This document shows, one piece after another, positions 5,065-39,850 of a DNA stretch of 64,000 nucleotides (the stretch's first letter is position 1; each line of letters starts with the position of its first letter). The DNA lies in the IMG/VR virus record IMGVR_UViG_3300036944_001289, positions 124,001-188,000 of that record. One strand, 5' to 3'. A program made the translations under genes and the position numbers. The notes beneath the pieces are model-generated. The model searched no databases, was not told where the DNA came from, and worked only from the letters and a program-made list of their open reading frames with translations.

Positions 5065-6060
5065 CTAGCGTTTGAGACTTCTGTACGTCTCAAACGAGAC
5101 GTCTGCATTAAACCCGTCTTTAACACCTTTTATAATAACAGCTATCGCGTCGTGTGAATGTAGAGATTCAAGATGACTTAATACCACTTTAAAATCTAAA
5201 ATCTTATCGTTTGTATTGAGTGCTTTGTATAAAAGTCTTGCTGCGTCTTCAACAAACTTAGGGTTCGCACCGTTTAATTCAGCAAAAGCTTGTTCATCCT
5301 CACGTAATACCATTACTTGAGTTTCTGTCTTAAGTGCAGATAAACAGAGTTGCTGTAAATCTTCTAACCAAATAAGATCGTTACACATTACAGATACTCT
5401 CGCTGTAGATCTTTGTGAGTGTGGAATTGCAGCTCTATTCCTGTACTTTCTTGCATGTTCACTTAATTCATTAGAGCAAGGGCATGCACTACTATATACG
5501 AAATCGAAATGGATTACTTTTTTAATTTCATTATTGCGATTTACAGATATCTCAAACGTGACATCATAATATTGATATCCTGATAGCCCTGTTCTTAGTG
5601 ATTCTTGTAATATAGGATAGCTTATATGTAGCGCTATTTTAGCATCGAAAGAACCTATTTTATTTCTATATTCTTGTAATACTTTTTCGACGAGATTGAT
5701 ATTAAAATGTTCTTCTTTATACTCATAAAATGATCTAACTATGCGAGACATATTAATACCTCTTGACTCTGCATCGAGAGAGACTGTACCAGTAACAATA
5801 GTTTCGAGTTCTATGGGTGTGTAGTCTTTTCTGTCCCATTTGAGAGGTAATCTGAAACCGTGTATACCAACATGTTCTATGTGTTCACGTATACCTCCAT
5901 ATATATCATTTTGTAAATCTGGTAACGTTTGTTTATACTCTGCAGATGTTTTAAAATCTACATCATATTCCTTGATAGGTTCAATATATTGACTTGAATA
6001 TAGTGTTCCTATCAATTGTTCTGCTAATTTATTCTTGTCTTGTGTATTCATCGAGATCAT
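5065..6060 (-). CDS. folE2: GTP cyclohydrolase IB
   Basis: LPDLQ, RGINMSR, YSSACPCS, PHSQRS, REDEQAFAE, PKFVEDAAR, ESLHSHDA motifs. Confidence 0.95.
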   Translation of the reverse strand: MISMNTQDKNKLAEQLIGTLYSSQYIEPIKEYDVDFKTSAEYKQTLPDLQNDIYGGIREHIEHVGIHGFRLPLKWDRKDYTPIELETIVTGTVSLDAESRGINMSRIVRSFYEYKEEHFNINLVEKVLQEYRNKIGSFDAKIALHISYPILQESLRTGLSGYQYYDVTFEISVNRNNEIKKVIHFDFVYSSACPCSNELSEHARKYRNRAAIPHSQRSTARVSVMCNDLIWLEDLQQLCLSALKTETQVMVLREDEQAFAELNGANPKFVEDAARLLYKALNTNDKILDFKVVLSHLESLHSHDAIAVIIKGVKDGFNADVSFETYRSLKR

Positions 6061-8836: not shown

Positions 8837-9469
8837 ATGATATATCAATCGAGTAAAATAATACCGTTAGGTTCTTGTGCATTTAGACAGCCATTTGCAG
8901 AGTCACATTGTAAATTCTTACACGGTTATAGATTACAAGCAAAGATTTGGGTTGCTTGTGATAAATTAGATAATAAAAACTGGGTCTTTGATTTTGGTGG
9001 TTTTAAAAGTATTAAAACTATTCTAGAAGATCAATTTGATCACACTACTGTTGTCGCTGAGAATGATCCTCATATCAATACGTTTAAAGAATTACATGCA
9101 AAGGGTATAATTGATCTAAGAGTCATGTCTGGTGTAGGTATCGAGAAGTTTGCAGAGTATGTACTTGAAGTGGCTAACACATACATAAAGAATTCAACAA
9201 ATGGTCGCTGTTGGGTGTCTCAAGTTGAAGTATGGGAGCATGAGCAAAACTCTGCAATGGCAATTAACTTCTGTAAAGAAGATATTAAACAAGCAGTTAA
9301 TAATATAGTTGCTAACGAAAACAAAACAGAGGTAAAGATTGAAGAGCCTGTTAAACCAGTAGAAAATATAACCCAACAAACAACCAATCAAACCGCAAAT
9401 CCATTATATGCTAAAAAGAGTACTGGGTGGTCTGATCCATTTAAAGGCACTTCTTGGGGTAATAAATAA
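8837..9469 (+). CDS. queD: 6-carboxytetrahydropterin synthase with C-terminal extension
   Basis: SHCKFLHGY, WVFDFG, FDHT, E-K-F-A, VEVWEHEQNSA motifs. Confidence 0.9.
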   Translation: MIYQSSKIIPLGSCAFRQPFAESHCKFLHGYRLQAKIWVACDKLDNKNWVFDFGGFKSIKTILEDQFDHTTVVAENDPHINTFKELHAKGIIDLRVMSGVGIEKFAEYVLEVANTYIKNSTNGRCWVSQVEVWEHEQNSAMAINFCKEDIKQAVNNIVANENKTEVKIEEPVKPVENITQQTTNQTANPLYAKKSTGWSDPFKGTSWGNK

Positions 9470-10559: not shown

Positions 10560-11330
10560 ATGAATGATATACTTTCAATATCCGACGATAAAGCATTCTA
10601 TACGCTTGAAGGAGAAGGTCGCTTTGTAGGTCAACCATCAGTTTTCTTGAGGTTGGCAATGTGTAATTTAACGTGTAAAGGGTTTGCATCTGAAGACTCA
10701 CCACACGGTTGTGATTCTTATATCTCTTGGTCAATTAAGAATCGTTTCTCATACGAAGATCTAAACAAATACTTTAGTGATAATGGTTTTGTAGAAAAGT
10801 TAAAAGAAGGTGCAATCTTAAAGTTAACTGGTGGAGAACCATTTCTACAACAGAAAAGACTATATGAATGGGTTGTACAATTCAAGAAGACATTTGGATT
10901 TAGAGAGACCTATCTTGGTGATGAACCTATTCTAAAGATAGACTTTGAAACAAACGGTACTATTTTACCGGATGATAAATGGTCAAGCGTTTTAAACGCT
11001 ACATTTACTACATCACCTAAAATGTCAAATAACGGTGATGAAGAGAAACTAAGATACAAACCAGAAGTACTAAAGTATCTCATTTCAAAAAATGCATGCT
11101 TTAAGTTTGTAATTAACAACCAATCTGATCTAGATGAACTGTATACAAAGTATATCCTCTCTACGGATGTTCTACTACCTAAAGATCTTATCTGGTTAAT
11201 GCCTTGTTGTGGTTCTCGTAAAGAACATGAGTTAAAAGCACCAATGGTTGCAGAGTTATGTAAGGAACATGGATTTAATTTCAGTCCAAGATTGCATTTA
11301 ATTCTTTGGAACCAAGCTTTACGTGTATAA
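10560..11330 (+). CDS. queE: 7-carboxy-7-deazaguanine synthase (radical SAM)
   Basis: YTLEGEG, VFLRL, CNLTC-x11-CDS, TGGEP, ETNGT, SPK, FKFV, PRLH motifs. Confidence 0.9.
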   Translation: MNDILSISDDKAFYTLEGEGRFVGQPSVFLRLAMCNLTCKGFASEDSPHGCDSYISWSIKNRFSYEDLNKYFSDNGFVEKLKEGAILKLTGGEPFLQQKRLYEWVVQFKKTFGFRETYLGDEPILKIDFETNGTILPDDKWSSVLNATFTTSPKMSNNGDEEKLRYKPEVLKYLISKNACFKFVINNQSDLDELYTKYILSTDVLLPKDLIWLMPCCGSRKEHELKAPMVAELCKEHGFNFSPRLHLILWNQALRV

Positions 11331-13276: not shown

Positions 13277-13301
13277 ATGTCTAAAGCATATAATATCAAT
13301 T

Positions 13302-14093
13302 ATGCGTATCGCGATTTCAGGGACGGCTTCACAAGGGAAGAGTACTCTTATTAAAGACTTTCTAACAGAATGGCCTTTATTTAAATCTGAAAGCTCTACT
13401 TATAGAGACTTAATAAAAACTGCAAATTTACCTCATAGTAAAAATGCTACCAAAGACAGCCAGTGGAAGATATTGAACTTTATGTTGGATGAGCTCCAAA
13501 AATATACACTTACTGATAACGTCATATTCGACAGATGTCCGCTAGATAATCTAGTATACTCACTATGGTGCTTTGAAAATAACGTAGGTGATATTGATAA
13601 GGAATTTATCGATAAGTGCATACCTATTGTAAGAGAAAGTTTAAGACATCTAGATATTATCTTTTTTATACCCATTACTAGGGTATCACCTGTTAAGATT
13701 GAAAATGACGGATTGAGAGAATCCGATGGTGTTTATATTAAAGAGATTGACAATATTTTCAAAGCTCTTAATATGCAATATAGATTGGGTTTAGGTAAAA
13801 CACCGTTCTTTCCTACAGATGACTGCCCTGCGGTTATAGAAATATTTGGTAATCGTCAAGAACGTATTCAAATGATCAAGCTATACTTAAATCAGAACGG
13901 TGAATGTATAGGTGGAGACGTTAATGATCCCAATAATATACTAAACCCTAATAATATACTAAACCCTAATAATTTGTTAGTAGATCAAATAGGCTCAATT
14001 CTTAGTGACCAAAAAGCTATCGATAAGAAAGAAAAAGCCTATAAGAAAGAAATTAAACAAATTAAGGAATTTGTAAAGAAAAATAAACGTTAA
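13302..14093 (+). CDS. P-loop nucleotide kinase/ATPase (AAA_28-like), copy 1
   Basis: MRIAISGTASQGKST, DRCPLDN, DIIFF, DGLRE; start re-called at 13302; PNNILN repeat near 13930. Confidence 0.8.
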   Translation: MRIAISGTASQGKSTLIKDFLTEWPLFKSESSTYRDLIKTANLPHSKNATKDSQWKILNFMLDELQKYTLTDNVIFDRCPLDNLVYSLWCFENNVGDIDKEFIDKCIPIVRESLRHLDIIFFIPITRVSPVKIENDGLRESDGVYIKEIDNIFKALNMQYRLGLGKTPFFPTDDCPAVIEIFGNRQERIQMIKLYLNQNGECIGGDVNDPNNILNPNNILNPNNLLVDQIGSILSDQKAIDKKEKAYKKEIKQIKEFVKKNKR

Positions 14094-14434
14094 TTGGTAG
14101 CACTAAGCATTATTGCGTAGTTTGCACCATTTATTCTTATTTTTATATAGTGTGTAGAACTTGTTAAAACAGCAGAAGTCGTAGTTTGCCCGTAAAAAGT
14201 TGAAGATAACGACGATATATTCAACGTATTAGTAGTAACAGCCGAGGACAACGACAATATATCTGATGAGTTGCTACTAATAGTAGACGCAAACGTGACA
14301 TTATCTAAACCTACTATAAAATCTTTAAAATCTAGACGTCTGGTCTCAATACCATTATCTACTATCAGATAATCTCCATTAATAATTTCATTTGTTACAG
14401 GTAACTGATTGATACCTATGTTTACGGTTGACAT
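14090..14434 (-). CDS. small fibre/appendage-like structural protein
   Basis: Start re-called; INQLP...DYLIVD N-module, S/T-rich body, YIKIRING.NYAI C-terminus. Confidence 0.55.
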   Translation of the reverse strand: MSTVNIGINQLPVTNEIINGDYLIVDNGIETRRLDFKDFIVGLDNVTFASTISSNSSDILSLSSAVTTNTLNISSLSSTFYGQTTTSAVLTSSTHYIKIRINGANYAIMLSATN

Positions 14435-14460
14435 ATATAAAATATTTAATATAATACTAT

Positions 14461-22006: not shown

Positions 22007-22007
22007 T

Positions 22008-22844: not shown

Positions 22845-23812
22845 AAAAAATAGCGTTCCACACAAATGAGTTAAATTTACGCGGCACTAATGTTGCATTA
22901 TACGACTACGCGCATTACAACGAACAAATACTCAATAATACCTCTTATATTATTTCAAATAAAAATGCAGACATGTCTGCGTATAAGAAGTTTATTGAAA
23001 GATGGCCTTCTCGTGTATTTCTCTATGATAACTTTTCTGAGGTTGATGCCTTTCTAAAAAAAGAAAATATAGAGTTTATTTATATTGTAAAAGCTGGTGG
23101 TGTAGATGGTAAGACAGTAAACAATGCAAAAAATCTTATACATGCTGTATTTCAACACTACGAACCGCACGGTGAAAAATATGTATACATATCACAGTGG
23201 TTAGCGCAAAAAATGTGTAAAGATAGTGATAACTATATACCTTATATAGTAGACTTACCACCATCTAATGCTAATTTAAGACAGAAATTAAATATACCTG
23301 AAACAGCTACAGTAATGGGTAGACACGGAGGTTATGATGAATTTGATTTTTATTACACAATACAAGCGGTAGTAGAGTCACTAAATAAGCGACAGGATTT
23401 GTACTATGTATTCATGAATACAAGGCCGTTTATTAATCACCCACGTGTATTTTTTATCGAAGGTACATATAATTTACAACATAAGTCAAACTTTATATCT
23501 ATGTGTGATTGTATGATCCATGGCAGACAGCAAGGAGAAACGTTTGGACTTGCAATAGGTGAATTCTTATTCTTTGATAAACCGGTTATTCTATCAACAC
23601 AAGGTATCGATGAAAATCACCGTTATATGTTAAGCGATAAAGGTTTTTGGTATGACGATTATTCTAGTTGTTTATCTATGTTACTAGAGTTTGATAAGAC
23701 TAAGCTTATACCTGGCACATACAAAGCACTAGTAAGTCAGTATACACCACAGAAAGTAATGGAACAATTCAATAGTAAATTTCTTGGGGGTTTAAAGACT
23801 GGTTTTTATTGA
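22841..23812 (+). CDS. GT4-like glycosyltransferase
   Basis: RGTNVALYDY, GRHGG, HGRQQGETFGLAIGEF...KPVI. Confidence 0.85.
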   Translation: MKKIAFHTNELNLRGTNVALYDYAHYNEQILNNTSYIISNKNADMSAYKKFIERWPSRVFLYDNFSEVDAFLKKENIEFIYIVKAGGVDGKTVNNAKNLIHAVFQHYEPHGEKYVYISQWLAQKMCKDSDNYIPYIVDLPPSNANLRQKLNIPETATVMGRHGGYDEFDFYYTIQAVVESLNKRQDLYYVFMNTRPFINHPRVFFIEGTYNLQHKSNFISMCDCMIHGRQQGETFGLAIGEFLFFDKPVILSTQGIDENHRYMLSDKGFWYDDYSSCLSMLLEFDKTKLIPGTYKALVSQYTPQKVMEQFNSKFLGGLKTGFY

Positions 23813-29320: not shown

Positions 29321-30292
29321 ATGTTATTCGAAGAGCAAATATCACGCAAACCTAACTTGTACCCTTGGACAAAGGAATTTATCAAAGCAATGCATAACGG
29401 TTTTTGGACAGAAGATGAATTCTCATTTAAATCTGATGTACAGCAATTTAAAGTAAATTTAACTAAACAAGAACAAGATATGATAATCAAAGTTCTATCC
29501 GCTATAGGGCAAATAGAGGTAGAAGTAAAAACATTCTGGGGAGAGCTTGGTAAGAATCTACCACACCCATCGATTAAAGATCTTGGGTTTGTTATGGCTA
29601 ACACCGAAGTTATTCATAATAACGCTTATGAAAAACTTTTAACACTTTTGGGACTAGAAGATATTTTCCAAGAAAATCTCAAGCTAGACTGGATTCAAGG
29701 TAGAGTTAAGTACCTAAAAAAGCACAATCATAGATTTTACAAAGACTCTAAAAAACAATACTTATACGCTATAATTCTATTCACATTATATGTTGAAAAC
29801 GTTTCATTATTTTCTCAGTTTTATATAGTCAACTGGTTTGCAAGATTTAAAAATCTCTTAAAAGATACTGATCAACAAGTCAAATATACACGTAACGAAG
29901 AAAATATACACGCACTAGTAGGTATTAAAATAATTAACACATTGAGAGAAGAATACCCGGAACTTTTTGATAATGAACTCGAAGAAAGAATACTAAGTGA
30001 AGCACGCGAATCTATTAAGGCTGAATCAATCATAATCGATTGGATGGTAGGTGATCTACGTGAAGAAAATGTATCACCAGATATTCTTAAAGAGTTTATT
30101 AAAAACAGAATGAATCAATCATTATTAAACATAGGTTTTAAGAGTATATTTGATATAGATCAAGATCTACTAAGCAAAACAACCTGGTTTGATGAAGAGT
30201 TACTTGGTAATAATATGACCGACTTTTTTCATACTCGACCTGTCGAATACAGCAAAAAAGGGCATTCATTCTCTGAATCTGATTTATTTTAA
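29321..30292 (+). CDS. nrdB: ribonucleotide reductase beta subunit
   Basis: FW...E, EVIHNNAY, ENVSLFSQF, NEENIH, TDFF. Confidence 0.95.
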   Translation: MLFEEQISRKPNLYPWTKEFIKAMHNGFWTEDEFSFKSDVQQFKVNLTKQEQDMIIKVLSAIGQIEVEVKTFWGELGKNLPHPSIKDLGFVMANTEVIHNNAYEKLLTLLGLEDIFQENLKLDWIQGRVKYLKKHNHRFYKDSKKQYLYAIILFTLYVENVSLFSQFYIVNWFARFKNLLKDTDQQVKYTRNEENIHALVGIKIINTLREEYPELFDNELEERILSEARESIKAESIIIDWMVGDLREENVSPDILKEFIKNRMNQSLLNIGFKSIFDIDQDLLSKTTWFDEELLGNNMTDFFHTRPVEYSKKGHSFSESDLF

Positions 30293-30295
30293 TTT

Positions 30296-31942
30296 ATGGA
30301 AACAATATATTGGTTAAACGAGGACTCTAGAACGTACTTGCAGCGGGGATATTTATTACCTGGAGAGACTGCAGAGAATCGTATTAGAGATATTGCGGTT
30401 TTTGCAGAAGGTATATTACAAATACAAGGATTTGCGAATAAATTTGAAGACTATTTAAAGAAAGGTTTTTATAGCTTATCAAGCCCTATTTGGAGTAATT
30501 TTGGCAGAAAACGTGGCCTACCTATATCATGTTTTGGTTCGTACATAAACGATGACATCAATGATATTCTATTTAAAATAGGTGAGGTTGGATCAATGTC
30601 TAAATCTGGTGGAGGTACTTCCGGTTATTTCGGTAAAGTTAGATCAAGAGGTTCTAAGATCTCTTCTGGAGGTGAATCAACTGGTGTACATCATCAGTTG
30701 ACTGTCTTCAACGCTATTACAAACTACATCTCACAAGGTAACGTGCGCAGAGGATCATTTGCTGCATATCTACCAATTGATCATGGAGACTTTGATGAGT
30801 TTATAAATATAAGATCTGACGGTGATTCTATTCAGGATCTATCAATAGGTGTTTGTATCACAAATGAGTGGATGGAGGATATGATTGCTGGCAACACCGA
30901 GAAACGTCAACGTTGGGGTAAGGTAATTAAGAAGAGATTCGAATCAGGTTACCCGTACATATTCTTTACAGATAATGCAAATGATCAAGCTCCTAAGGTT
31001 TATAAAGATAAAGGGTTAAAAATAACTCATTCTAACTTATGCTCTGAAATTATGCTTGCAAATGGTATTGATGAATCATTTGTATGTGACCTATCATCTC
31101 TTAATCTTGAAAAATGGGATGAGTGGAAAGATACAGATGCTGTAGAAGTGCTTACATTCTTTCTGGATGCCGTAATGACTGATTTTATTAATAAAACAGA
31201 AGGTGACCTATTTTTATCTCACGCACGTAAATTTGCTATCAATCAACGTGCACTAGGTATAGGTGTATTAGGTTGGCATACATATTTGCAATCTAAAATG
31301 ATTGCATTTGAGTCTGTTCAAGCGAAATCATTAAATGCACAAATCTGGAAAAATATAAGAACTAAAGCAGATAATGCATCGCAGAAATTGGCTGATTTAT
31401 TTGGAGAACCAGAACTACTTAAAGGTTATGGACGTAGAAATACTACTACACTTGCTATCGCACCTACAACGTCGAGTTCTTTTATTTTAGGTCAAGTATC
31501 ACCTTCTATAGAACCATTAAATTCAAATTACTTTGTAAAAGACTTAGCAAAAGGTAAATTTACGTTTAGGAATCCACAATTAGTAAAGCTATTAGAATCT
31601 AAAGATAAAAACAAAGAGGATATTTGGAGATCTATTCTCGTAAAAGGTGGTTCTGTACAGCATTTAGATTTCTTTACGGAAGATGAAAAGAATGTATTTA
31701 AAACATTTGGAGAGATATCTCAAAAAGAAATTATAATACAAGCTGCTACACGCCAAAAGTACATCGACCAAGGTCAATCCCTTAATATAATGATACCACC
31801 CGATACCAAACCTAAAGATGTAAGTGAACTAACGATCTTTGCGTGGAGAGAAGGTATTAAAGCGCTTTATTATCAAAGAAGTGCTAACCCAGCTCAGGAG
31901 CTGGCGAGAAACATATTAAATTGTCAGTCCTGCCAATCATAA
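30296..31942 (+). CDS. nrdA: ribonucleotide reductase alpha subunit (no ATP cone)
   Basis: PISCF, RRGSFAAY, SNLCSEI, CDLSS, IAPTTSSS, IDQGQSLN, LYY, C-terminal CQSC. Confidence 0.97.
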   Translation: METIYWLNEDSRTYLQRGYLLPGETAENRIRDIAVFAEGILQIQGFANKFEDYLKKGFYSLSSPIWSNFGRKRGLPISCFGSYINDDINDILFKIGEVGSMSKSGGGTSGYFGKVRSRGSKISSGGESTGVHHQLTVFNAITNYISQGNVRRGSFAAYLPIDHGDFDEFINIRSDGDSIQDLSIGVCITNEWMEDMIAGNTEKRQRWGKVIKKRFESGYPYIFFTDNANDQAPKVYKDKGLKITHSNLCSEIMLANGIDESFVCDLSSLNLEKWDEWKDTDAVEVLTFFLDAVMTDFINKTEGDLFLSHARKFAINQRALGIGVLGWHTYLQSKMIAFESVQAKSLNAQIWKNIRTKADNASQKLADLFGEPELLKGYGRRNTTTLAIAPTTSSSFILGQVSPSIEPLNSNYFVKDLAKGKFTFRNPQLVKLLESKDKNKEDIWRSILVKGGSVQHLDFFTEDEKNVFKTFGEISQKEIIIQAATRQKYIDQGQSLNIMIPPDTKPKDVSELTIFAWREGIKALYYQRSANPAQELARNILNCQSCQS

Positions 31943-32363: not shown

Positions 32364-34649
32364 TCACTTACGTTCGTTGTGTATACCTTCAGATACTGAT
32401 CGTTGTGACCCATCGTTTAATTCTTTAGCAGCAACTCTTACAGCATCATTAGTTGCGAGTAATGTGAGAGGTAAGTTTGCAAATGCATGAGAATGCGGAT
32501 AACATTCAATTATATTAGTACCCGTACTGGTATATTCCAATGTTGCAGGACTTCCGTTTATTTTAACATTTACTACTGTACCTGTAACAAATTTACCAAA
32601 TAGTGTAACTTGTTCAGTCACCTGATATTCCTTAGGTGCTGTTATATGCTGTATGTAAGTTTCACCTTCTACGTGTAGACCTCCACCAATAATAACATTA
32701 TTATTAACACCGAGACTTTCGTTTATTAGTACTTGTCTTTGATTTTTATTTCTTAATCTTAGGATTTCAGCAGATATGTTAATTGTTTTTGCATCTATAT
32801 TAATTTCATTAGATGATGCAATATTTACTTGCTCGCCTACTATATTAGTAACAGTGCCTGTTATGTTAGTTTGTCCAAGAGATTTAATATTGATGCCGCC
32901 AGCACCTACTAAAACGTTCATTCTATTACATGCTGTTATCGTATAATTACCACCTGGTAAGTCTTGCACGTGTACCAACTCTACTAATGGACTCTCTTTT
33001 TTGTTTACATATACACCAAAATCATCAACAAGTACTTCATTGCTTAACATTTTACCGATACCATCGTATCGTATACTACCGAAATCATTAAACGTTAAAC
33101 CTATAGTTTCAATTTTATGCTTGGCAATTTGCGATATCTCACTACCACCAACACCAAGTTGTTTTTCTATTTCTGTTAGCTGTTGTATATTAAGTTCTAT
33201 TAACTGGTTTAAAATATCTTTTTGATCTTCTACATCCCAATTACCACCTTGTGAAGATGTGCTCTTACCTACACCACCAGGTCCCCATTCAGTGTTAGAT
33301 TCAGCAAGATATCTTGAAGTAGGTGGTAATGATCTATCAACAGTAGAACCTAAATTATTATTAATATTATAAGCACCGTCAGATGATGCATTTGTTGTTG
33401 TGTTATATGTGTCAAATGATTGACTACCTGTAATAGTATCATACGTTACTGATCCATCTGTTACTGGATGTGCAGCAAAAGCACCTGATCTTGTTTGCAG
33501 TAAACTATTACGTTTTAGTCTTATATTACCGTCTGCATCTAAAACGTTATTATTATCCGTACGCTTAATTTCAAATAGTTGCTTATTTTCATGTATTATA
33601 GCATAAGTTAGTTTCCACTGATCAAATAGTTCACTATTTAATAACCCGACTTTTTTATACTTATCACGCATTACTATTTCATCTAAGCTCTTACCGGTAT
33701 ATACATTATTAAAACCTCTTACCGTTTCATACTGATCATTTAGTACTAGCTTTTGGCTATTCTTTGTAGCGAGCTCTATATTAGATTGATTATTAAATTC
33801 TTTAAACGACCCTGAAAAATGCGTAAACTTTAACTTCTCATTTAAGTCTGTATTAACAACCTCTATAGTACCACCTTTTTGATTTATAACAAATTTATTT
33901 CTGTACGTATCTACATTATTATTATATTCGGTTTGTATCTTATTTTCGAAACTACCAGGGTAATCTATACCACCATTTTCAGAATTAAAAATTCCCTGCC
34001 AATCTATATTACCGTATGTTGTGGCAAAATAAATAGGTGCTGTAGGGTTACCATCTCTGAAAAATACCCATACATGTGAACCTACACTTGGTATAGCGAA
34101 AGAGCCTTTTGCTTTATTAGAATATGATGAAGGTAAATACTCGTAAGATAAAGGATTAGGTCTATTAATATTATTTGAAGCAGAATCAAACGCGTCTTGA
34201 AGTCTATATGTTTGATCTTCGTAGAAAGCAGCAGGTTTCCCAGGTATATCTTTTGAGTCAATATCTGGCGATAGCTGATCTGCAAAATTAGAGTCCGAAG
34301 TAGTACCTACTTGCCTTGTATTATTATACCTACCACTAGTGTTCTCACCTACTAATGGGCATGCACATTCTGCCCAAGGTAATATACGTTTTAATTCTTC
34401 AGCAACGTTTATGATTGTAGAACTAGTCGAAGATTCACCACCTGTCTCTGTTTGTTGCTTTAATATCTGTGTTAGTACAGATTGTATATTATCACCTAAA
34501 AACTTAAATGATTTATTAGTTTTCTGTTGTATCCATCTTTCGTACACAGTAGGTGAAATATAAGGTATGAATACCTTAACTTTACCTGATTTGTCTGGAT
34601 CGTTATTTTGTATAACTATACCTACATGATTGCCGTAATATTTTTTCAT
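32364..34649 (-). CDS. gp5/VgrG-like baseplate hub-spike protein
   Basis: YYG..VGIVIQNNDPDKSGKVKV, PWA, PSVGSHVWVFF.DG.P..PIYF OB-fold; C-terminal beta-helix-like repeats and an HSH motif. Confidence 0.8.
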   Translation of the reverse strand: MKKYYGNHVGIVIQNNDPDKSGKVKVFIPYISPTVYERWIQQKTNKSFKFLGDNIQSVLTQILKQQTETGGESSTSSTIINVAEELKRILPWAECACPLVGENTSGRYNNTRQVGTTSDSNFADQLSPDIDSKDIPGKPAAFYEDQTYRLQDAFDSASNNINRPNPLSYEYLPSSYSNKAKGSFAIPSVGSHVWVFFRDGNPTAPIYFATTYGNIDWQGIFNSENGGIDYPGSFENKIQTEYNNNVDTYRNKFVINQKGGTIEVVNTDLNEKLKFTHFSGSFKEFNNQSNIELATKNSQKLVLNDQYETVRGFNNVYTGKSLDEIVMRDKYKKVGLLNSELFDQWKLTYAIIHENKQLFEIKRTDNNNVLDADGNIRLKRNSLLQTRSGAFAAHPVTDGSVTYDTITGSQSFDTYNTTTNASSDGAYNINNNLGSTVDRSLPPTSRYLAESNTEWGPGGVGKSTSSQGGNWDVEDQKDILNQLIELNIQQLTEIEKQLGVGGSEISQIAKHKIETIGLTFNDFGSIRYDGIGKMLSNEVLVDDFGVYVNKKESPLVELVHVQDLPGGNYTITACNRMNVLVGAGGINIKSLGQTNITGTVTNIVGEQVNIASSNEINIDAKTINISAEILRLRNKNQRQVLINESLGVNNNVIIGGGLHVEGETYIQHITAPKEYQVTEQVTLFGKFVTGTVVNVKINGSPATLEYTSTGTNIIECYPHSHAFANLPLTLLATNDAVRVAAKELNDGSQRSVSEGIHNERK

Positions 34650-35728: not shown

Positions 35729-35781
35729 ATCAATATTTAAAGAAAATATTGATTTTTCAAATTTACATATATAATGAAACT

Positions 35782-36585
35782 ATGAATCATAAGATTTTAA
35801 TTTCACATGAATCACCTATATCAATACTGACCGACTCCCTTCAGTTTAACGATTATGATTACTGTCTAGTACATCTTTTAGAACAGAAACCTGAATATGC
35901 TGAGTTTTTTAAAAGGAGTAAAGCACTCAATCGTGAAATCCTACTAGATAATAGTATATTTGAATTAGGTACATCGTTCGAACCTTCTAAATTTGCTAAG
36001 TATGTAGAATCACTACAACCTAATTGGTATATAGTACCAGATGTTTTAGAAGATGGTTATGCTACGATAGAATCGTTCAATAAGTTTACGTCTACATACA
36101 AAGATCTACCTGGATTAAAAATAGGTGCAGTACAAGGTAAATGTTATGATGAATTAGTTGACTGTTATAAGTATATGTCGCAAAATGCTGACTATATTGC
36201 TATAAGTTTTGATTTTAGCTACTATATCGGTACAGGTATTGGTTTATCAAAATTAGATAGATGGTGTGATGGTAGAAAGCGATTTATTAAATCTTTGATA
36301 AATGATGGTGTATGGGATTGGAATAAACCACACCATTTACTAGGTTGTTCTTTAGCAAAAGAGTTTAGCTATTACGTGAATAATAACATCTATAATATTA
36401 GATCGATTGATACATCAAACCCTGTTGTAGCTGGTATCAAAGGCATGAGATATAATGGAGATTTAGGGTTAAATGATAAACCTTCGATTAAACTTGCTGA
36501 CTTAATTGACCACGAAGTAACAACTGATGAATTGGAAATTATTAATTATAATACACGTCAATTTAAAAACATATTAAAAAGATGA
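35782..36585 (+). CDS. TGT-fold DpdA-like deazaguanine DNA transglycosylase
   Basis: Start at 35782; LDNSIFE, VPDV, AVQG, HHLLGC, SIDTSNP match TGT catalytic-barrel motifs; no Zn-binding CxCxxC; operon with queF. Confidence 0.7.
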   Translation: MNHKILISHESPISILTDSLQFNDYDYCLVHLLEQKPEYAEFFKRSKALNREILLDNSIFELGTSFEPSKFAKYVESLQPNWYIVPDVLEDGYATIESFNKFTSTYKDLPGLKIGAVQGKCYDELVDCYKYMSQNADYIAISFDFSYYIGTGIGLSKLDRWCDGRKRFIKSLINDGVWDWNKPHHLLGCSLAKEFSYYVNNNIYNIRSIDTSNPVVAGIKGMRYNGDLGLNDKPSIKLADLIDHEVTTDELEIINYNTRQFKNILKR

Positions 36586-37151
36586 TAATAACATTTACAG
36601 GTACACAATCAGTAGGTAAAAGTACTTTGCTTTCAGCTCTTCAAAAAGATGAAAGATATAAAGACTGGATGTTTGAACCGGAAATAACGCGTAGTCTAAA
36701 AGAGAAGTTTGGACTGAATATAAATGAATCAGGTGATTCAATAACGCAGTTATTCGTTCTAAATTCGCATTTAGAAAATGTAGTAAAACATAAGAACAAT
36801 AATGTTATTTTAGATAGATGTATAGTTGATGGGCTTGTATATACAACATATCAGTATATGACAGGTAAGATTCATACAGATGTATTTTTGCATGCAAAGT
36901 ATATGTTCGATCTTATTATAGATAAATATGATATAATATTTCATATTGAGCCTGAATTTCCTGTTGTTGATGATGGTGTAAGAAGTATAGATGAAAAGTT
37001 TAGAACAACTATAGCTTCATTGATAAACGAAGCCTTACAATCTAATAGTGTAGTTAGAACTAAGATAGTAAAGTTAACAGGTACTGTAGAAGAAAGATTG
37101 AAACAAATAGATATAGCTATTGAAAACTTAAAAGCACAAAATATAATATAA
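36582..37151 (+). CDS. P-loop nucleotide kinase/ATPase (AAA_28-like), copy 2
   Basis: FTGTQSVGKST, DRCIVDG, YDIIF, DDGVR. Confidence 0.8.
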   Translation: MIITFTGTQSVGKSTLLSALQKDERYKDWMFEPEITRSLKEKFGLNINESGDSITQLFVLNSHLENVVKHKNNNVILDRCIVDGLVYTTYQYMTGKIHTDVFLHAKYMFDLIIDKYDIIFHIEPEFPVVDDGVRSIDEKFRTTIASLINEALQSNSVVRTKIVKLTGTVEERLKQIDIAIENLKAQNII

Positions 37152-37153
37152 AC

Positions 37154-38074
37154 ATGGCACTTAAAAAACTCGACAATAAAAACATAAGCAAGCACCTTGG
37201 TAAGGTATCACAATACAAATCAACATATGATGCTTCTCTCTTGGTAAGAGAGCCAAGATCATCTAATAGAGTACATCTTAATATTAAAGATGATAACTTA
37301 CCCTTTGTAGGTTATGATACTTGGAATGCATATGAAGTTAGTGCATTAACAGATAGTGGTTTACCTGTTGCAGGTGTAGCTAAAATTGTTTACCCTGCTT
37401 CAAGCAAATATATCGTAGAATCAAAGTCTATTAAACTTTACTTTAATTCTTTTAATATGACTAAACTAGGGTTTCATAGCGATGCAGTTCTTGATAAAAT
37501 AGCAATTACTGCTTCAGAAGATCTCTCAAAACTACTCGAAACAGATGTACAAGTTTACGTACATTCGAATGCTGAAGTACTACGTCAACAAAGCACTGCA
37601 TATACCGAATGGAATCACAAAAAATACTCAACAATAGAGGATGAGTATAATGTTAATGATGTAACCTTTGAAATCTATAAGGAAACACCAGAACTACTAC
37701 AAGTAGTAGATAGTGTTAACGATACAGTTCACTATCATAGTGCTCTACTTAAGAGTAATTGTAGAGTAACATCACAACCAGACTGGGGTGATGTATATAT
37801 AACCATCACAAAAAAAGATAAAACTATTGACCCTATCTCTTTACTAAAGTATATAATATCATTTAGAGATGAGTGCCACTTTCATGAAGAGATATGTGAG
37901 ACAATTTATAAACGCATATATGATAAGCTAACACCTGATGAACTTACGGTAAGATGTTTGTATGCACGTAGGGGTGGTATTGATATAAACCCTGAGCGTG
38001 CAAATAAAGAGGTATTATTAAGTACTAATCTACAACTTAATTGTATACCACATATTAAAACACCTAAGCAATAA
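37154..38074 (+). CDS. queF: NADPH-dependent preQ0 reductase (bimodular QueF)
   Basis: WNAYEVS, IVESKSIKLYFNSF, LKSNCRVTSQPDWG (catalytic Cys), FHEEICE, YARRGGIDINP. Confidence 0.95.
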   Translation: MALKKLDNKNISKHLGKVSQYKSTYDASLLVREPRSSNRVHLNIKDDNLPFVGYDTWNAYEVSALTDSGLPVAGVAKIVYPASSKYIVESKSIKLYFNSFNMTKLGFHSDAVLDKIAITASEDLSKLLETDVQVYVHSNAEVLRQQSTAYTEWNHKKYSTIEDEYNVNDVTFEIYKETPELLQVVDSVNDTVHYHSALLKSNCRVTSQPDWGDVYITITKKDKTIDPISLLKYIISFRDECHFHEEICETIYKRIYDKLTPDELTVRCLYARRGGIDINPERANKEVLLSTNLQLNCIPHIKTPKQ

Positions 38075-38101: not shown

Positions 38102-38689
38102 ATGGCAGATACAAAATTAACAGAGTTAGACGCACTTTCATCAGTGCAAAGTACCGACTTACTGTACGTTGTTAGTCTACAAACTTTACCTTCAGGTGAA
38201 TCCAAGAAAATCACTGTCAATGATTTTCTTGGCAATCTTAGTGATTCTATAGAGACGAGTAGCACGATTACAGCAGCTTCTATATTAGCTAATACGGTAG
38301 CTGGTACTAACGTAAATGCAGTAGCATTTACGAGTAATACAATAAATACGTCTTACATAAATGCAACTTCTGGTAATTTTGATAGTATTACCTCAGGCTT
38401 CTTTCCATTAACGGCAGTTACATCTATAACTGCTGATAATACATATGATAACAGTAGAGTATATAATTTAAATACAAATTCTACTAATTTAAGTGTTATA
38501 CTACCATCAGAACTTTCTAACGGTTTTAATATGGGTATAACAAATATAGGTACAGGTACTATATACATATCATCAACACAAGTGCCAATGATTTGTGCAT
38601 TCTCCAATAGATGCTCCACACAATTCGGTAGCTTATTTATATATAAATCAAATAATATTCTTTTTGGTATAGGTGGCTTCGATCTATGA
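38102..38689 (+). CDS. fibre/appendage-like structural protein
   Basis: KLTEL...DLLYVV N-module, S/T-rich, beta-rich C-terminus. Confidence 0.55.
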   Translation: MADTKLTELDALSSVQSTDLLYVVSLQTLPSGESKKITVNDFLGNLSDSIETSSTITAASILANTVAGTNVNAVAFTSNTINTSYINATSGNFDSITSGFFPLTAVTSITADNTYDNSRVYNLNTNSTNLSVILPSELSNGFNMGITNIGTGTIYISSTQVPMICAFSNRCSTQFGSLFIYKSNNILFGIGGFDL

Positions 38690-39489
38690 TACTTAAAGAT
38701 TTCATGATATTATGTTGCGCACAAACGTATGATTATGATGCGCTAAAATATATAAAAAGTGTTGAACAAGCAGATGGTCAACCACTGGAAACTATTGTAA
38801 AAGATGCAATACGAACTTTTATCTTTAATTGTAAACGCGATAACACTTGGCAATACATTAACAATTCATGTTTATTGTGTGGCCCACACACTATTCAAGG
38901 TGCTTTAGTACCACTAAAAGGTGCTGCACCTATAAGTTATAATTTTACCTCATCTAATTATGATAGAAAAACTGGATTAGAATCACCATCAACTTCTGTA
39001 AATGCTTATATCGATACAGGATTCGATTCAAAAAGCGTTGGATTAGATGATATACATATAGCAACATATGCTTCATCAATACCTTTCGGATCTTTTGGTA
39101 ATATAATGGGAGATATTACAGATTCAAATTCTAGAATGACATTATTTAGATCTACATTAGGTTTAGGTAGTTATTGCAGAGCTACCAACCCTGATGGATA
39201 TTTTTCTACTGGTTTTGATTACACTAATAATCTGCTGGGTATTACAAGAGCATCATCCACTACATTTAATATGAGAGCTACAAGCACCAATAATTCTTTT
39301 ACGCGTGGATCGAGAGCAACAACTACAGCAAGTAATATTTACGTATATACAAGAAATCTAGGCGGTGCTTCTAATACACCTATAGGTATGACAAGACTAC
39401 AATTTTATTCATGCGGTAGAAACGTAGATCTTCAAAAGATTGAAAATAGAATATCTCAATACGTATCAGCAGTTTCGTTATTACCATGA
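38686..39489 (+). CDS. beta-sandwich structural protein (receptor-binding-like)
   Basis: YIKSVEQADG...ALVPLKG, YIDTGF; T/S/G-rich. Confidence 0.5.
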   Translation: MILKDFMILCCAQTYDYDALKYIKSVEQADGQPLETIVKDAIRTFIFNCKRDNTWQYINNSCLLCGPHTIQGALVPLKGAAPISYNFTSSNYDRKTGLESPSTSVNAYIDTGFDSKSVGLDDIHIATYASSIPFGSFGNIMGDITDSNSRMTLFRSTLGLGSYCRATNPDGYFSTGFDYTNNLLGITRASSTTFNMRATSTNNSFTRGSRATTTASNIYVYTRNLGGASNTPIGMTRLQFYSCGRNVDLQKIENRISQYVSAVSLLP

Positions 39490-39740
39490 CAACATATATC
39501 GACATAATGACAGCTACAGATTTAGAAAACTTTCGTTTTTTAATTTCTGATGAGTTAGGAAACGAAATTAATTTAGCACAACAAGGAAGTAATATGAAGA
39601 TTTCTCTCCATGAAATATCACCAGGTATACAATCTTTTACTTGTTATATTGTAAATGAAATAACAGAAACAGGTATATATAATCATTTATATAGCGTACT
39701 AAAAAATAAACTTTCAAGTATAGAAGTAGAACCTGTATAA
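39486..39740 (+). CDS. small hypothetical protein
   Basis: 84 aa, ATGA-coupled. Confidence 0.5.
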   Translation: MTTYIDIMTATDLENFRFLISDELGNEINLAQQGSNMKISLHEISPGIQSFTCYIVNEITETGIYNHLYSVLKNKLSSIEVEPV

Positions 39741-39763: not shown

Positions 39764-39795
39764 AAAAAAGCAGCTTTTTATAGCTGCTTTTTTTT
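39764..39795 (+). terminator. intrinsic terminator
   Basis: AAAAAAGCAGCT-loop-AGCTGCTTTTTT. Confidence 0.75.
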
Positions 39796-39820
39796 TATGT
39801 CTGTATTACAAATATAGACA

Positions 39821-39850
39821 TAAAAAAGAGCTGCTCTTTCGAGCAGCTCT
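39821..39850 (-). terminator. gp23 terminator
   Basis: AGAGCTGCTC-GAAA-GAGCAGCTCT plus U-run on the minus strand. Confidence 0.85.

What the first reader, a model, noticed from the sequence alone, without database searches (positions are those of the whole stretch)
35782..38074. Tight dpdA-like / nucleotide kinase / queF operon
Seen: three genes coupled by an ATGA overlap and a 2-nt gap under one TTGATT-N15-TATAAT promoter; a second, diverged kinase paralog lies at 13302. Known: post-replicative base exchange needs no kinase, while some phages fully replace dG with a deazaguanine. Inference: a kinase between the transglycosylase and QueF hints at a nucleotide-pool route (deaza-dNMP to dNTP) or salvage of modified nucleotides.
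Basis: partly seen in the sequence, partly recalled or inferred. Interest (0 to 1): 0.65.

Follow-up and report, generated by a model that had tools for sequence, protein, structure and literature searches.

The report
Phage deazaguanine operon with built-in kinase
A marine phage carries a tightly packed operon for swapping guanine in its DNA for a 7-deazaguanine base, and the small kinase wedged inside it is a conserved, so far overlooked partner of this enzyme family, which suggests the odd base is made as a free nucleotide before replication and not pasted into finished DNA.

Summary
Three genes sit at 35782-36585, 36582-37151 and 37154-38074, with an ATGA overlap and a 2-nt gap. A second kinase paralog starts at 13302.

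- **Gene 1** is a DpdA3-type TGT-fold protein. It is 48% identical to the DpdA3 of Flavobacterium phage immuto and 45% to that of Campylobacter phage CP220. Its closest solved structure is the DNA preQ0 insertase DpdA (Z 18.2).
- **Gene 2** is a P-loop kinase of the AAA_28 / NadR-RNK / dNK / TMPK fold.
- **Gene 3** is a bimodular QueF.

The 209-kb phage also encodes FolE2, QueD, QueE and QueC but no DpdN, so the predicted base is preQ1.

The trio is conserved in about 100 IMG/VR loci. DpdA3 lies beside a P-loop kinase in nine of ten lineage-level contexts examined. These include all three phages shown experimentally to replace 100% of G (CP220, phiST, immuto). The kinases belong to different families (AAA_28, AAA_18, AAA_33), and two DpdA3 proteins are fused to a T7 gp1.7-like domain. 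MazG, PRA-PH or HD hydrolases and the replicative polymerase are often adjacent.

The 2023 paper that named DpdA3 calls the modification post-replicative and never mentions a kinase. I judge a nucleotide-pool route most likely (about 0.5), but it is unproven. This phage has no recognisable dGTPase, and one DpdA3 clade has no kinase.

The parts
35749..35775 (+). Promoter-like element: TTGATT (35749-35754), 15-nt spacer, TATAAT (35770-35775). The -10 hexamer ends 6 nt before the ATG, so the mRNA would be leaderless or nearly so. There is no Shine-Dalgarno sequence.
   Evidence: Sequence. Not above chance on its own. The -10 hexamer and a TTGA-type -35 are kept in position in 9 diverged loci. The same promoter type is enriched genome-wide, 25 genes against about 4 expected.
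35782..36585 (+). DpdA3-type TGT-fold 7-deazaguanine transglycosylase, 267 aa.
   Evidence: No Pfam or NCBIfam hit; phrog_19058 at 1.7e-57. 48% identical to immuto gp206 'DpdA' and 45% to CP220 gp056. AF2 pLDDT 92. The top 50 Foldseek hits are all TGT. Exhaustive search: DpdA 7ui4 Z 18.2, ArcTGT 18.1, TGT 16.6. Invariant residues D56-N-S, D87, Q118, H185-LLG, D210-TSNP.
36582..37151 (+). Kin1, a P-loop kinase of 189 aa. Walker A GTQSVGKST, PE-x-TR motif, DRC motif, DDGxRS lid.
   Evidence: AAA_28 at 5e-17; dNK and thymidylate-kinase models fall below their cut-offs. phrog_2107. The profile's best solved relatives are the NadR RNK domain at 8.5e-4, TMPK at 3e-3 and dNK at 3.7e-3. AF2 pLDDT 90.7; Foldseek top hits are NadR-RNK, dAK/dGK, dCK and Dm-dNK, then TMPK.
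37120..37147 (+). Internal promoter-like site TTGAAA-N16-TATAAT inside the 3' end of Kin1, 6 nt before the QueF ATG.
   Evidence: Best-scoring site of the scan, 11 of 12 matches. Listed in the genome-wide class.
37154..38074 (+). Bimodular QueF (NADPH-dependent preQ0 reductase), 306 aa.
   Evidence: QueF_N at 3.3e-31 and QueF at 3e-23. TIGR03138 scores 249.7 bits, below its 293.45 cut-off. The QueF motif ESKSIKLY and the Cys motif SNCRVTSQPDWG can be read in the sequence. 47.6% identical to the immuto QueF.
38102..39740 (+). Three co-directional genes after QueF (38102-38689, 38686-39489, 39486-39740) of unknown function. They are probably co-transcribed but are not part of the conserved module.
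   Evidence: No Pfam hit; phrog_17104 (unknown function) for the second gene. Present only in the closest relatives L007-L009. In the other relatives QueF is followed directly by the major head protein gene.
39764..39850 (.). Terminator-like hairpins at 39764-39793 (+) and 39827-39850 (both strands), between the operon and the convergent head gene.
   Evidence: 5 terminator-like sites against 1.6 expected in the region.
13302..14093 (+). Kin2, the second kinase paralog (263 aa from ATG 13302). It has an N-terminal kinase domain and a C-terminal extension of about 95 aa that is low-complexity and Lys-rich.
   Evidence: AAA_28 at 5.8e-8; phrog_2107 at 2e-14; 24% identical to Kin1. A Kin2 ortholog is present in 4 of 5 large related genomes, each time within about 1 kb of QueE or QueD.
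10560..11330 (+). QueE-like radical-SAM protein.
   Evidence: Fer4_12 at 9.2e-5, weak. Homologous to the QueE genes of immuto and the clade-B clusters.
8837..9469 (+). QueD (6-carboxytetrahydropterin synthase, PTPS family).
   Evidence: PF01242 at 1.2e-14.
5065..6060 (-). FolE2 (GTP cyclohydrolase IB).
   Evidence: PF02649 at 2.6e-68. QueC lies outside the window at G000 110536-111288.
29321..31942 (+). Ribonucleotide reductase small and large subunits (context: phage nucleotide metabolism about 4 kb upstream).
   Evidence: PF00268 at 1.1e-44 and PF02867 at 5.8e-93.

Best explanation
**What it is.** The trio is the core of a DpdA3-type system that replaces genomic guanine by a 7-deazaguanine. 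Here the base is most likely preQ1, giving dPreQ1, because the phage has FolE2, QueD, QueE, QueC and QueF but no DpdN formyltransferase.

**The kinase is not a passenger.** A P-loop kinase is a conserved functional partner of DpdA3.

**Most likely mechanism (inferred, not shown).**
1. preQ0 is made from GTP and reduced to preQ1 by QueF.
2. DpdA3 exchanges the guanine of a free deoxyguanosine nucleotide or nucleoside (dGMP or dG) for preQ1.
3. Kin1 and Kin2 phosphorylate the product toward the diphosphate, and a nucleoside-diphosphate kinase completes dPreQ1TP.
4. The phage replisome incorporates it.

This copies the T4 scheme of dCTPase, dCMP hydroxymethylase and dNMP kinase. It would explain why DpdA3 phages reach 100% replacement while other DpdA subfamilies modify only 0.1-30% of G.

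**Shown:** gene identities, folds, synteny, fusions and promoter class.
**Inferred:** the substrate of DpdA3, the substrates of the kinases, and the timing relative to replication.
For: 1. Conservation in the window's clade. 36 of 38 DpdA3-anchored IMG/VR loci at 55% identity or more carry Kin1 downstream, and the 2 exceptions have under 2 kb of downstream sequence. 73 of 75 kinase-anchored loci carry DpdA3 upstream, and 67 carry all three genes.
2. Both kinase paralogs are kept in related complete genomes. Kin2 stays next to QueE or QueD.
3. All three phages with measured complete replacement (Table 1 of PMC10516641) have a P-loop kinase touching DpdA3 and a nucleotide hydrolase within three genes:
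   - CP220: HD+AAA_33 fusion, then DpdA3, then AAA_28.
   - phiST: MazG, one gene, AAA_18 kinase, DpdA3, DnaE.
   - immuto: PRA-PH/MazG-like, one gene, DpdA3, one gene, DpdN, AAA_28, QueF.
4. Further lineages:
   - BSTP12: P-loop protein overlapping a DpdA3-like gene, then DNA polymerase I.
   - L149, L163, L164, L165, L169: AAA_28-type kinase beside DpdA3, with MazG, dUTPase or DCD-like genes and DnaE nearby.
5. The kinases come from different families. Two DpdA3 proteins are fused to a DUF3310 domain that PHROGs calls 'nucleotide kinase' and that is 36% identical to the C-terminal part of T7 gp1.7. This is non-orthologous displacement plus fusion.
6. Specificity. Among 50,697 phage records, Kin1 relatives occur only in Campylobacter and immuto phages and in a Streptomyces group. 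A DpdA2-type phage with QueF and low-level dPreQ1 (VH7D) has no kinase near QueF.
7. DpdA3 alone could not be made to work in the authors' E. coli assay (PMC10516641).
8. The DpdA3 family is acidic to neutral (net charge -16 to 0) and lacks the Zn subdomain of TGT.
9. The TGT superfamily already spans tRNA, DNA and protein substrates (Cap10).
Against: - No assay exists for any DpdA3 or for any of these kinases.
- The window's own genome has no recognisable dGTP- or dGMP-removing enzyme. There is no HD, MazG or PRA-PH domain, and no homolog of the phiST, immuto or CP220 hydrolases.
- Its only dUTPase-family gene looks canonical and lies 85 kb away.
- A DpdA3 clade at 35-40% identity (L044-L063) has QueC, QueD, QueE, FolE2 and, in at least two of its loci, a phosphoribosyltransferase. 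It shows no kinase in five contigs of 53-112 kb, although those contigs are only 33-67% complete.
- About 70 Streptomyces phages carry a kinase of this family without any DpdA3.
- The closest solved structure is a DNA-acting enzyme, DpdA 7ui4.
- The authors who defined DpdA3 conclude that insertion is post-replicative, and a 2025 paper still cites deazaguanine as the textbook nucleic-acid-level example.
- Part of the synteny may be inherited and not independently selected. In both this phage and CP220 the module sits inside the structural gene block.
Confidence: 0.5

Rival explanations
1. Post-replicative insertion, which is the published view. DpdA3 flips and exchanges every G in finished phage DNA. 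The kinases, and in other lineages the phosphoribosyltransferase, serve a supply loop. Each exchange frees one guanine, which is salvaged to GMP and re-phosphorylated to GTP. The GTP feeds FolE and QueD/E/C/F to make the next preQ1.
For: - DpdA3 is a TGT/DpdA-fold enzyme, and its best structural match acts on DNA.
- Cui et al. 2023 argue this from the presence of a DpdA in every modified phage.
- Phosphoribosyltransferases recur in DpdA3 clusters: immuto gp211 and L051. The window's genome has a Prs-like PRPP synthase.
- Complete replacement needs one GTP per G, about 70,000 per 209-kb genome, so extra kinase capacity is plausible.
- Kin2 sits with QueE and QueD, the GTP-consuming steps.
Against: - The kinases are not guanylate-kinase-family proteins. 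They are dNK, TMPK, NadR-RNK, AAA_18 or AAA_33 types and a gp1.7-like domain, which are folds mostly tied to deoxynucleosides and deoxynucleotides.
- MazG, PRA-PH or HD hydrolases next to DpdA3 would destroy the dGTP that a post-replicative route needs in order to build G-containing DNA first.
- DpdA subfamilies known to act on DNA reach only 0.1-30% replacement and are motif-bound.
- DpdA3 lacks the Zn subdomain and is acidic.
- DpdA3 alone was inactive on E. coli DNA.
Confidence: 0.3
2. The kinases are ordinary phage dNMP or deoxynucleoside salvage kinases, like T4 gp1, for recycling host DNA. They sit next to DpdA3 and QueF only because nucleotide-metabolism genes cluster and share an early promoter class.
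For: - PHROGs labels the family 'thymidylate kinase'.
- About 70 Streptomyces phages carry the family without DpdA3.
- The same promoter type drives the gene just upstream of the RNR genes and the dUTPase gene as well.
- Some clusters also hold ThyA or ThyX and dUTPase.
Against: - Adjacency, often with overlapping stop and start codons, is kept across at least 9 lineages with different kinase families, and includes fusions.
- Kin1 relatives are absent from nearly all of the 50,697 phage records outside DpdA3 phages.
- Two paralogs are both tied to deazaguanine genes.
Confidence: 0.12
3. The AAA_28 proteins are nicotinamide-riboside kinases (NadR RNK-like) that support NAD(P)H supply for QueF. 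They would work with the phage's NAMPT and Prs NAD-salvage genes.
For: - The best sequence-level solved relative is the NadR RNK domain, sharing a DDGxR lid.
- The phage has NAMPT and a Prs-like gene.
- QueF consumes NADPH.
Against: - CP220, phiST, L164, L165 and L169 have the kinase beside DpdA3 but no QueF in the cluster.
- The NadR match is marginal (E about 1e-3).
- The kinases are about 145 kb from the NAD genes.
Confidence: 0.04

Closest known systems
[quoted passage not shown]
   Same: - DpdA3 homolog: 48% identical to immuto and 45% to CP220. My DpdA3 profile also hits phiST CGPG_00065 at E 2.4e-19.
- Phage-encoded preQ0 pathway.
- Bimodular QueF, as in immuto.
- The order kinase then QueF is the same as in immuto, and the order DpdA3 then kinase is the same as in CP220.
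   Different: - There is no DpdN formyltransferase, so dPreQ1 is predicted and not fdPreQ1. Full replacement by dPreQ1 itself has not been reported.
- FolE2 is used in place of FolE.
- There is no MazG, PRA-PH or HD gene.
- The pathway genes are scattered over about 50 kb.
- The published description does not include the kinases or hydrolases and assumes post-replicative insertion.
Bacterial DpdA and phage DpdA1/DpdA2 DNA-guanine transglycosylases; tRNA-guanine transglycosylase (TGT)
   Same: TIM-barrel TGT fold: 7ui4 Z 18.2, 1iq8 Z 18.1, 3unt Z 16.6. Invariant Asp residues sit at strand ends, where TGT carries its catalytic Asp pair.
   Different: - No hit to any Pfam model and no TGT among solved-structure sequence matches. 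hhalign against E. coli TGT gives probability 2.4%.
- About 120 residues shorter than TGT.
- No CxCxxC...H zinc site.
- Associated with complete replacement and not with partial, motif-bound replacement.
T4 hydroxymethylcytosine pathway (gp56 dCTPase, gp42 dCMP hydroxymethylase, gp1 dNMP kinase) and the dZ pathway (MazZ, PurZ, DatZ). From established knowledge; the dZ scheme is also summarised in PMC12783734.
   Same: The logic is the same if the best explanation holds: a canonical dNTP is hydrolysed, the base is changed at the monophosphate level, a dedicated kinase follows, and the polymerase incorporates the product to give 100% replacement. The matching gene set (NTP pyrophosphatase or HD, DpdA3, kinase) occurs in phiST, immuto, CP220 and L163.
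   Different: The base-changing enzyme would be a transglycosylase that swaps the whole base, not an enzyme that decorates it. None of the proteins is homologous to gp42, gp1 or PurZ. In this window the hydrolase is missing.
Toyocamycin/sangivamycin biosynthesis (preQ0 to nucleotide via a phosphoribosyltransferase). From established knowledge.
   Same: A 7-deazaguanine base is turned into a free nucleotide. Phosphoribosyltransferase and GMP-reductase-like genes occur in some DpdA3 clusters.
   Different: This phage has no such phosphoribosyltransferase, only a Prs-like gene. DpdA3 has no counterpart in that pathway.

Membership tests
DpdA3 subfamily (Cui et al. 2023) | Sequence homology to the founding members (phiST CGPG_00065, the CP220 homolog, immuto gp206) | tested here: met
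   48.5% identity over 97% of the query to immuto 'DpdA', and 45.6% to CP220. A profile built from the window's family hits immuto at 7e-100, CP220 at 4e-83 and phiST at 2.4e-19.
DpdA3 subfamily (Cui et al. 2023) | Distant TGT/DpdA fold | tested here: met
   AF2 pLDDT 92. Foldseek top 50 hits are all TGT (E about 1e-8). VIA-align gives DpdA Z 18.2 and ArcTGT Z 18.1, against 14.9 or less for generic TIM barrels.
DpdA3 subfamily (Cui et al. 2023) | Co-encoded with 7-deazaguanine synthesis genes | tested here: met
   FolE2, QueD, QueE-like, QueC and QueF are all in the same 209-kb genome.
DpdA3 subfamily (Cui et al. 2023) | Complete replacement of G in virion DNA | not testable with these tools
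   This needs LC-MS of virion DNA. The phage is known only as a metagenomic record.
TGT / DpdA superfamily (PF01702) | Match to the family's sequence model | tested here: not met
   No Pfam or NCBIfam hit. No TGT among PDB sequence matches. hhalign against E. coli TGT gives probability 2.4%.
TGT / DpdA superfamily (PF01702) | Zinc-binding CxCxxC...H subdomain | tested here: not met
   No such motif in the sequence. The only nearly invariant Cys is C189, and the protein ends about 55 residues after the last barrel strand.
TGT / DpdA superfamily (PF01702) | Catalytic Asp pair (general acid/base and nucleophile) | tested here: inconclusive
   Invariant D56 (strand 53-56) and D210 (strand 206-211) sit at strand ends as in TGT. 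No residue-level structural superposition was available.
QueF, bimodular type | QueF_N plus QueF domains, QueF motif and catalytic Cys | tested here: met
   PF14819 at 3.3e-31 and PF14489 at 3e-23. ESKSIKLY and SNCRVTSQPDWG can be read. The NCBIfam equivalog cut-off is not reached (249.7 against 293.45).
Thymidylate kinase (the PHROG and GenBank label of the kinase's relatives) | Score above the Pfam PF02223 cut-off | tested here: not met
   16.8 bits against a cut-off of 27. The label is therefore unproven.
Deoxynucleoside kinase family (PF01712) | Score above the family cut-off; ERS motif | tested here: not met
   17.6 bits against a cut-off of 27. The motif is DRC, not ERS. The fold is nevertheless closest to dAK/dGK, dCK and dNK together with NadR-RNK.
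AAA_28 (NadR RNK-like P-loop kinases) | Score above the family cut-off | tested here: met
   Kin1 scores 63 bits and Kin2 33.6 bits against a cut-off of 27.

The most novel reading that the evidence does not exclude
DpdA3 is not a DNA transglycosylase. It would be the first TGT-superfamily enzyme that exchanges the base of a free deoxyguanosine nucleotide or nucleoside. Together with dedicated kinases, and in many lineages a dGTP-destroying MazG or HD enzyme, it would form a third natural pre-replicative purine-replacement pathway, after 2-aminoadenine and deoxyinosine. [quoted passage not shown]
Probability: 0.4. Interest if true: 0.85.

Novelty: new variant of a known kind. Interest (0 to 1): 0.62.

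Why it matters
How some phages replace every guanine by a 7-deazaguanine is unresolved. A modified-dGTP route was proposed in 2019. After DpdA3 was found in 2023 the field settled on post-replicative exchange, but DpdA3 has never been shown to work.

The comparative pattern found here gives a concrete, cheap test set: kinase next to DpdA3 in nearly every lineage, different kinase families, fusions, and neighbouring NTP hydrolases and polymerases. The test set is three small soluble proteins plus preQ1 and dGMP.

If the nucleotide route is right, three things follow:
- It defines a new reaction for the TGT fold.
- It explains the gap between complete and partial replacement among DpdA subfamilies.
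- It offers an enzymatic route to 7-deaza-dNTPs, which are useful reagents for sequencing and PCR.

The family is also large and mostly marine: 4,252 representatives at 50% identity and 2,722 clusters at 90%. Fully G-substituted genomes may therefore be common in ocean viromes and could bias methods that depend on restriction or ligation.

Tried and rejected
- **Single-sequence promoter scan.** Not above chance. The promoter is kept only because of cross-locus conservation.
- **Sequence-profile link to TGT.** Nothing from HMMER against PDB sequences. hhalign against E. coli TGT aligned only 44 columns at probability 2.4%. Residue equivalences with TGT are therefore not claimed.
- **Search for a dGTPase or dGMPase in this genome.** PF01966, PF03819 and PF01503 gave no hits. 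phmmer with the phiST MazG, the immuto PRA-PH and CP220 gp055 found nothing. The one dUTPase-family gene has canonical dUTPase motifs.
- **Unknown genes between QueE and Kin2** (12231-13231). Pfam, PHROGs and the protein atlas gave nothing usable.
- **Streptomyces phage Karimac.** The 'methyltransferase' upstream of its kinase is not DpdA3-like.
- **dUTPase and DCD genes in DpdA3 clusters as candidate dGTPases.** Not relied on, since they may simply serve dTTP synthesis beside ThyA or ThyX.
- **Net charge of DpdA3.** Treated as weak evidence only.
- **Crippen et al. 2019** (J Virol, PMC6854489). Could not be read. What it says is known here only through citations.
No reads were laid and expression is untested.
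- **Complex prediction** was not used, because the report does not claim that the proteins bind each other.


Full report
**1. The observation**

The window is part of a complete 209,282-bp viral record with direct terminal repeats and 33% G+C. The window covers bases 124001-188000 of that record.

- Gene 1 runs from ATG 35782 to TGA 36585.
- Gene 2 runs from ATG 36582 to TAA 37151, sharing ATGA with gene 1.
- Gene 3 runs from ATG 37154 to 38074, after a 2-nt gap.

TTGATT (35749-35754) and TATAAT (35770-35775) are there, 15 nt apart.

Taken alone, that promoter is not above chance in this AT-rich DNA. The scan found 31 sigma-70-like sites against 31.8 expected in shuffles. An alignment of the upstream region from nine diverged relatives changes the picture. 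A TA[TC]AAT hexamer is fixed 6-9 nt before the ATG, and each locus has its own TTGAnn or TGGACA hexamer 15-17 nt further up.

Genome-wide, 25 of 307 genes have such a hexamer 4-10 nt before the ATG, where about 4 are expected. Among them are QueD, QueE, Kin2 and QueF. The promoter is therefore plausible. It would give a leaderless or nearly leaderless mRNA, and it defines a class shared by the deazaguanine genes.

Two corrections apply. QueF has its own internal site (37120-37147, 11 of 12 matches). Three more co-directional genes follow before terminator-like hairpins at 39764-39850.

The module is a plus-strand island inside minus-strand structural genes. A baseplate-hub-like gene lies at 32364-34649. 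The major head protein, scaffold, protease and portal genes start from 39886.

**2. What the genes are**

*Gene 1 (267 aa).* It matches no Pfam or NCBIfam model. It is 48% identical to the protein annotated DpdA in Flavobacterium phage immuto_2-6A and 45% identical to CP220 gp056. Both are founding members of the DpdA3 subfamily (PMC10516641).
- An AlphaFold model from 22 homologs has pLDDT 92.
- Its 50 best Foldseek matches are all tRNA-guanine transglycosylases.
- An exhaustive structural search ranks the DNA preQ0 insertase DpdA first (7ui4, Z 18.2). ArcTGT (18.1), TGT (16.6), QTRT2 (16.0) and the CBASS protein Cap10 (15.1) follow. Generic TIM barrels score 14.9 or less.
- Invariant residues are D56-N-S, D87, Q118, H185-L-L-G and D210-T-S-N-P. 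There is no zinc motif.

*Gene 2 (189 aa).* It is an AAA_28 P-loop kinase (5e-17). It stays below the cut-offs of the dNK and thymidylate-kinase models.
- Its profile's nearest solved relatives are the ribosylnicotinamide-kinase domain of NadR (8.5e-4), a thymidylate kinase (3e-3) and a deoxynucleoside kinase (3.7e-3).
- Its model (pLDDT 90.7) is closest to NadR-RNK, bacterial dAK/dGK, dCK and Dm-dNK, and then to TMPKs.
- The fold therefore does not tell whether the acceptor is a nucleoside or a monophosphate. The database label 'thymidylate kinase' is unproven.

*Gene 3.* It is a bimodular QueF with the QueF motif and the catalytic-Cys motif. It falls below the NCBIfam equivalog cut-off.

*The rest of the pathway.* The genome also has FolE2 (window 5065-6060), QueD (8837-9469), a QueE-like gene (10560-11330) and QueC (just outside the window). 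There is no formyltransferase. The predicted DNA base is therefore preQ1, whereas immuto, which has DpdN, carries the formylated form.

**3. Conservation**

DpdA3 relatives are numerous. There are 2,722 clusters at 90% identity and 4,252 representatives at 50% identity, many from marine samples.

In IMG/VR:
- 36 of 38 loci with a DpdA3 at 55% identity or more carry Kin1 downstream. The two exceptions end within 2 kb.
- In the closest loci the three genes abut as they do here.
- In a middle clade, a DpdN formyltransferase follows DpdA3 (checked by Pfam in L024). L029 also has a GMP-reductase-like gene there. Kin1 and QueF are adjacent in most of these loci.
- Starting instead from the kinase, 73 of 75 loci have DpdA3 upstream and 67 have all three genes. 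The rest are cut by contig ends.

Related complete genomes keep both kinase paralogs, and Kin2 stays within about 1 kb of QueE or QueD.

**4. The kinase link reaches beyond this clade**

| Phage or locus | Gene order around DpdA3 |
|---|---|
| CP220 (100% dADG) | HD+AAA_33 fusion, DpdA3, AAA_28 kinase |
| phiST (100% dDG) | QueD, QueE, FolE, MazG, small ORF, AAA_18 kinase (CGPG_00066), DpdA3, split unannotated DnaE, ligase |
| immuto (100% fdPreQ1) | PRA-PH (MazG-like), small ORF, DpdA3, small ORF, DpdN, AAA_28 kinase, QueF |
| Bacillus phage BSTP12 | P-loop kinase-like ORF overlapping a DpdA3-like gene (mislabelled NadR), then DNA polymerase I |
| L149 | AAA_28 kinase, DpdA3 fused to DUF3310, DnaE |
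| L163 | FolE, DUF3310, dUTPase, MazG, DpdA3, ORF, AAA_28 kinase, QueF |
| L164 | AAA_28 kinase, DpdA3, DCD-like gene, preQ transporter-like Vut_1 |
| L165 | dUTPase, QueC, AAA_28 kinase, DpdA3, DnaE |
| L169 | DCD-like gene, QueC, kinase, DpdA3, DnaE |

Fusions also occur:
- Two DpdA3 representatives carry a C-terminal DUF3310 domain, which PHROGs calls 'nucleotide kinase'. One of them is 36% identical to residues 123-183 of T7 gp1.7.
- Two others are fused to DpdN.

As a control, Vibrio phage VH7D has QueF but belongs to the low-level dPreQ1 group. It has no P-loop kinase within 6 kb of QueF. Among 50,697 phage records, Kin1 relatives occur only in Campylobacter phages, immuto phages and a Streptomyces phage group.

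Exceptions:
- A DpdA3 clade at 35-40% identity (L044-L063) has QueC, QueD, QueE and FolE2. L051 carries a phosphoribosyltransferase by Pfam, and L061 has a same-sized ORF at the same position. In most of these loci the cluster sits next to RNR. No QueF was found in the flanks, and no kinase was found in five contigs of 53-112 kb, which are 33-67% complete.
- The Streptomyces phages have the kinase without DpdA3.

**5. Mechanism**

A DNA-level base exchange needs no kinase and needs G-containing DNA as its substrate. A pool-level route needs exactly what these clusters hold:
- an enzyme that makes the new glycosidic bond;
- kinases;
- often an enzyme that hydrolyses the canonical triphosphate;
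- a polymerase.

Different kinase families recur beside DpdA3, and fusions exist. This points to selection for the activity and not to inherited gene order.

I therefore rank the nucleotide-level route first, at about 0.5. In it, DpdA3 exchanges guanine for preQ1 on dGMP or dG, Kin1 and Kin2 phosphorylate the product, and the replisome incorporates it. This mirrors the T4 scheme of dCTPase, dCMP hydroxymethylase and dNMP kinase. It would explain why DpdA3 phages reach 100% while other DpdA subfamilies reach 0.1-30%. It would also explain why DpdA3 alone failed in the E. coli assay.

The main rival, at about 0.3, keeps DpdA3 on DNA. It gives the kinases, and elsewhere the phosphoribosyltransferase, the job of turning the released guanine back into GTP for the next round of preQ synthesis. 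It accounts for the phosphoribosyltransferases and for Kin2's place beside QueE. It does not account for the MazG and HD neighbours or for the deoxynucleotide-type kinase folds.

Generic salvage (0.12) and nicotinamide-riboside kinase (0.04) are less likely.

The weak points of the leading model:
- There is no assay.
- This phage has no recognisable dGTP-removing enzyme.
- One DpdA3 clade has no kinase.
- The best structural match acts on DNA.

**6. Relation to the literature held**

- Hutinet et al. 2019 note that a modified dGTP used by the polymerase had been 'proposed for Campylobacter phages' (PMC6884629).
- Cui et al. 2023 found DpdA3 and concluded that all these modifications are post-replicative. 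The word 'kinase' does not occur in either paper.
- 'DpdA3' occurs in no other relevant paper in the library.
- A December 2025 paper still uses deazaguanine as the example of nucleic-acid-level modification.
- Crippen et al. 2019 could not be read.

The locus is thus a member of a known system. It carries a conserved, undescribed component that reopens the question of mechanism.

**7. Limits**

No reads were laid.
- Counts of loci are not phylogenetically independent, and several loci come from the same or near-identical contigs.
- Residue-level comparison with TGT and surface electrostatics could not be done.

Noticed in passing
whole genome G000; examples at window 8837, 10560, 13302, 37154, 28415, 28774: Two upstream motif classes sit directly before start codons. 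The first is TTGAnn-N15-17-TA[TC]AAT ending 5-10 nt before the ATG (14 genes). These genes have no Shine-Dalgarno sequence and look leaderless. The second has the same -10 hexamer but an AGGAA(A/C) element about 10-15 nt upstream where the TTGA would be, and may be a middle-promoter class.
   Followed up: partly
G000 10445-15033 (outside the window; L146:1448-6033): An NAD-salvage or NAD-reconstitution cluster. It holds a NAMPT-like gene (PF04095 at 3.5e-37), an AAA ATPase, a 295-aa protein with a C-terminal nucleoside 2-deoxyribosyltransferase-like domain (PF15891 at 5.6e-16), and a Prs-like PRPP synthase. The deoxyribosyltransferase-like protein could matter for nucleoside base exchange or dNMP hydrolysis.
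   Followed up: partly
G000 21866-22900 (outside the window); L029:9385-10353: A GMP-reductase/IMPDH-domain protein without a CBS domain (1.2e-40). In relative L029 its homolog (42% identity, 8.6e-57) sits inside the operon between DpdN and Kin1. It may adjust the guanine-nucleotide pool.
   Followed up: partly
P0141, P0177 (metagenomic proteins): Natural fusions of DpdA3 with the DpdN-type formyltransferase (447 aa). They suggest that the two enzymes act on the same molecule in succession.
   Followed up: partly
P0150, P0153, P0165; L163: Several DpdA3 genes are extended by, or flanked by, GIY-YIG/NUMOD homing-endonuclease modules. The locus appears to be a hotspot for mobile endonucleases, as in CP220, where a homing endonuclease lies two genes upstream.
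   Followed up: no
L152:7115-10715 (Cellulophaga phage phiST, NC_020842.1): The public record has a 3.8-kb stretch without annotated genes right after DpdA3. It holds two ORFs that together make a split DnaE-type polymerase (PHP, pol III alpha, finger and HHH domains).
   Followed up: yes
L150:4896-5684 (Bacillus phage BSTP12, MW354678.1): BSTP12_038, annotated as 'NADR_SALTY trifunctional NAD biosynthesis/regulator protein', is a DpdA3-like protein (profile E 1.6e-22, motifs DNS, HLLG and SIDT). The P-loop protein is the neighbouring BSTP12_039. This phage group has Gat-QueC, so its DNA is probably modified.
   Followed up: partly
window 38102-39740: Three genes are inserted after QueF only in the closest relatives. 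The first is very acidic (pI 4.1), and its N-terminus looks like those of phage fibre or tailspike proteins. Function unknown.
   Followed up: no
window 14461-15243 and following plus-strand genes to about 24420: A long run of plus-strand genes of similar size (about 220-360 aa) starts right after Kin2. The first is a family-2 glycosyltransferase (7e-6). The others were not examined, but the run might encode a sugar- or surface-modification pathway.
   Followed up: no
window 9676-10479 (-) and 11415-11783 (+): A PhoH-like ATPase (1.9e-53) and a starvation-inducible-regulator-like gene (phrog_858) lie between QueD, QueE and Kin2. CP220 also has a PhoH-like gene a few genes from its DpdA3.
   Followed up: no
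model m77771f51d390 against PDB 9ntn_B: DpdA3 resembles Cap10 of a CBASS system (Z 15.1), a TGT-like protein solved in complex with a CD-NTase carrying a deazaguanine-type modification. This shows that the fold has already moved to non-nucleic-acid substrates.
   Followed up: no
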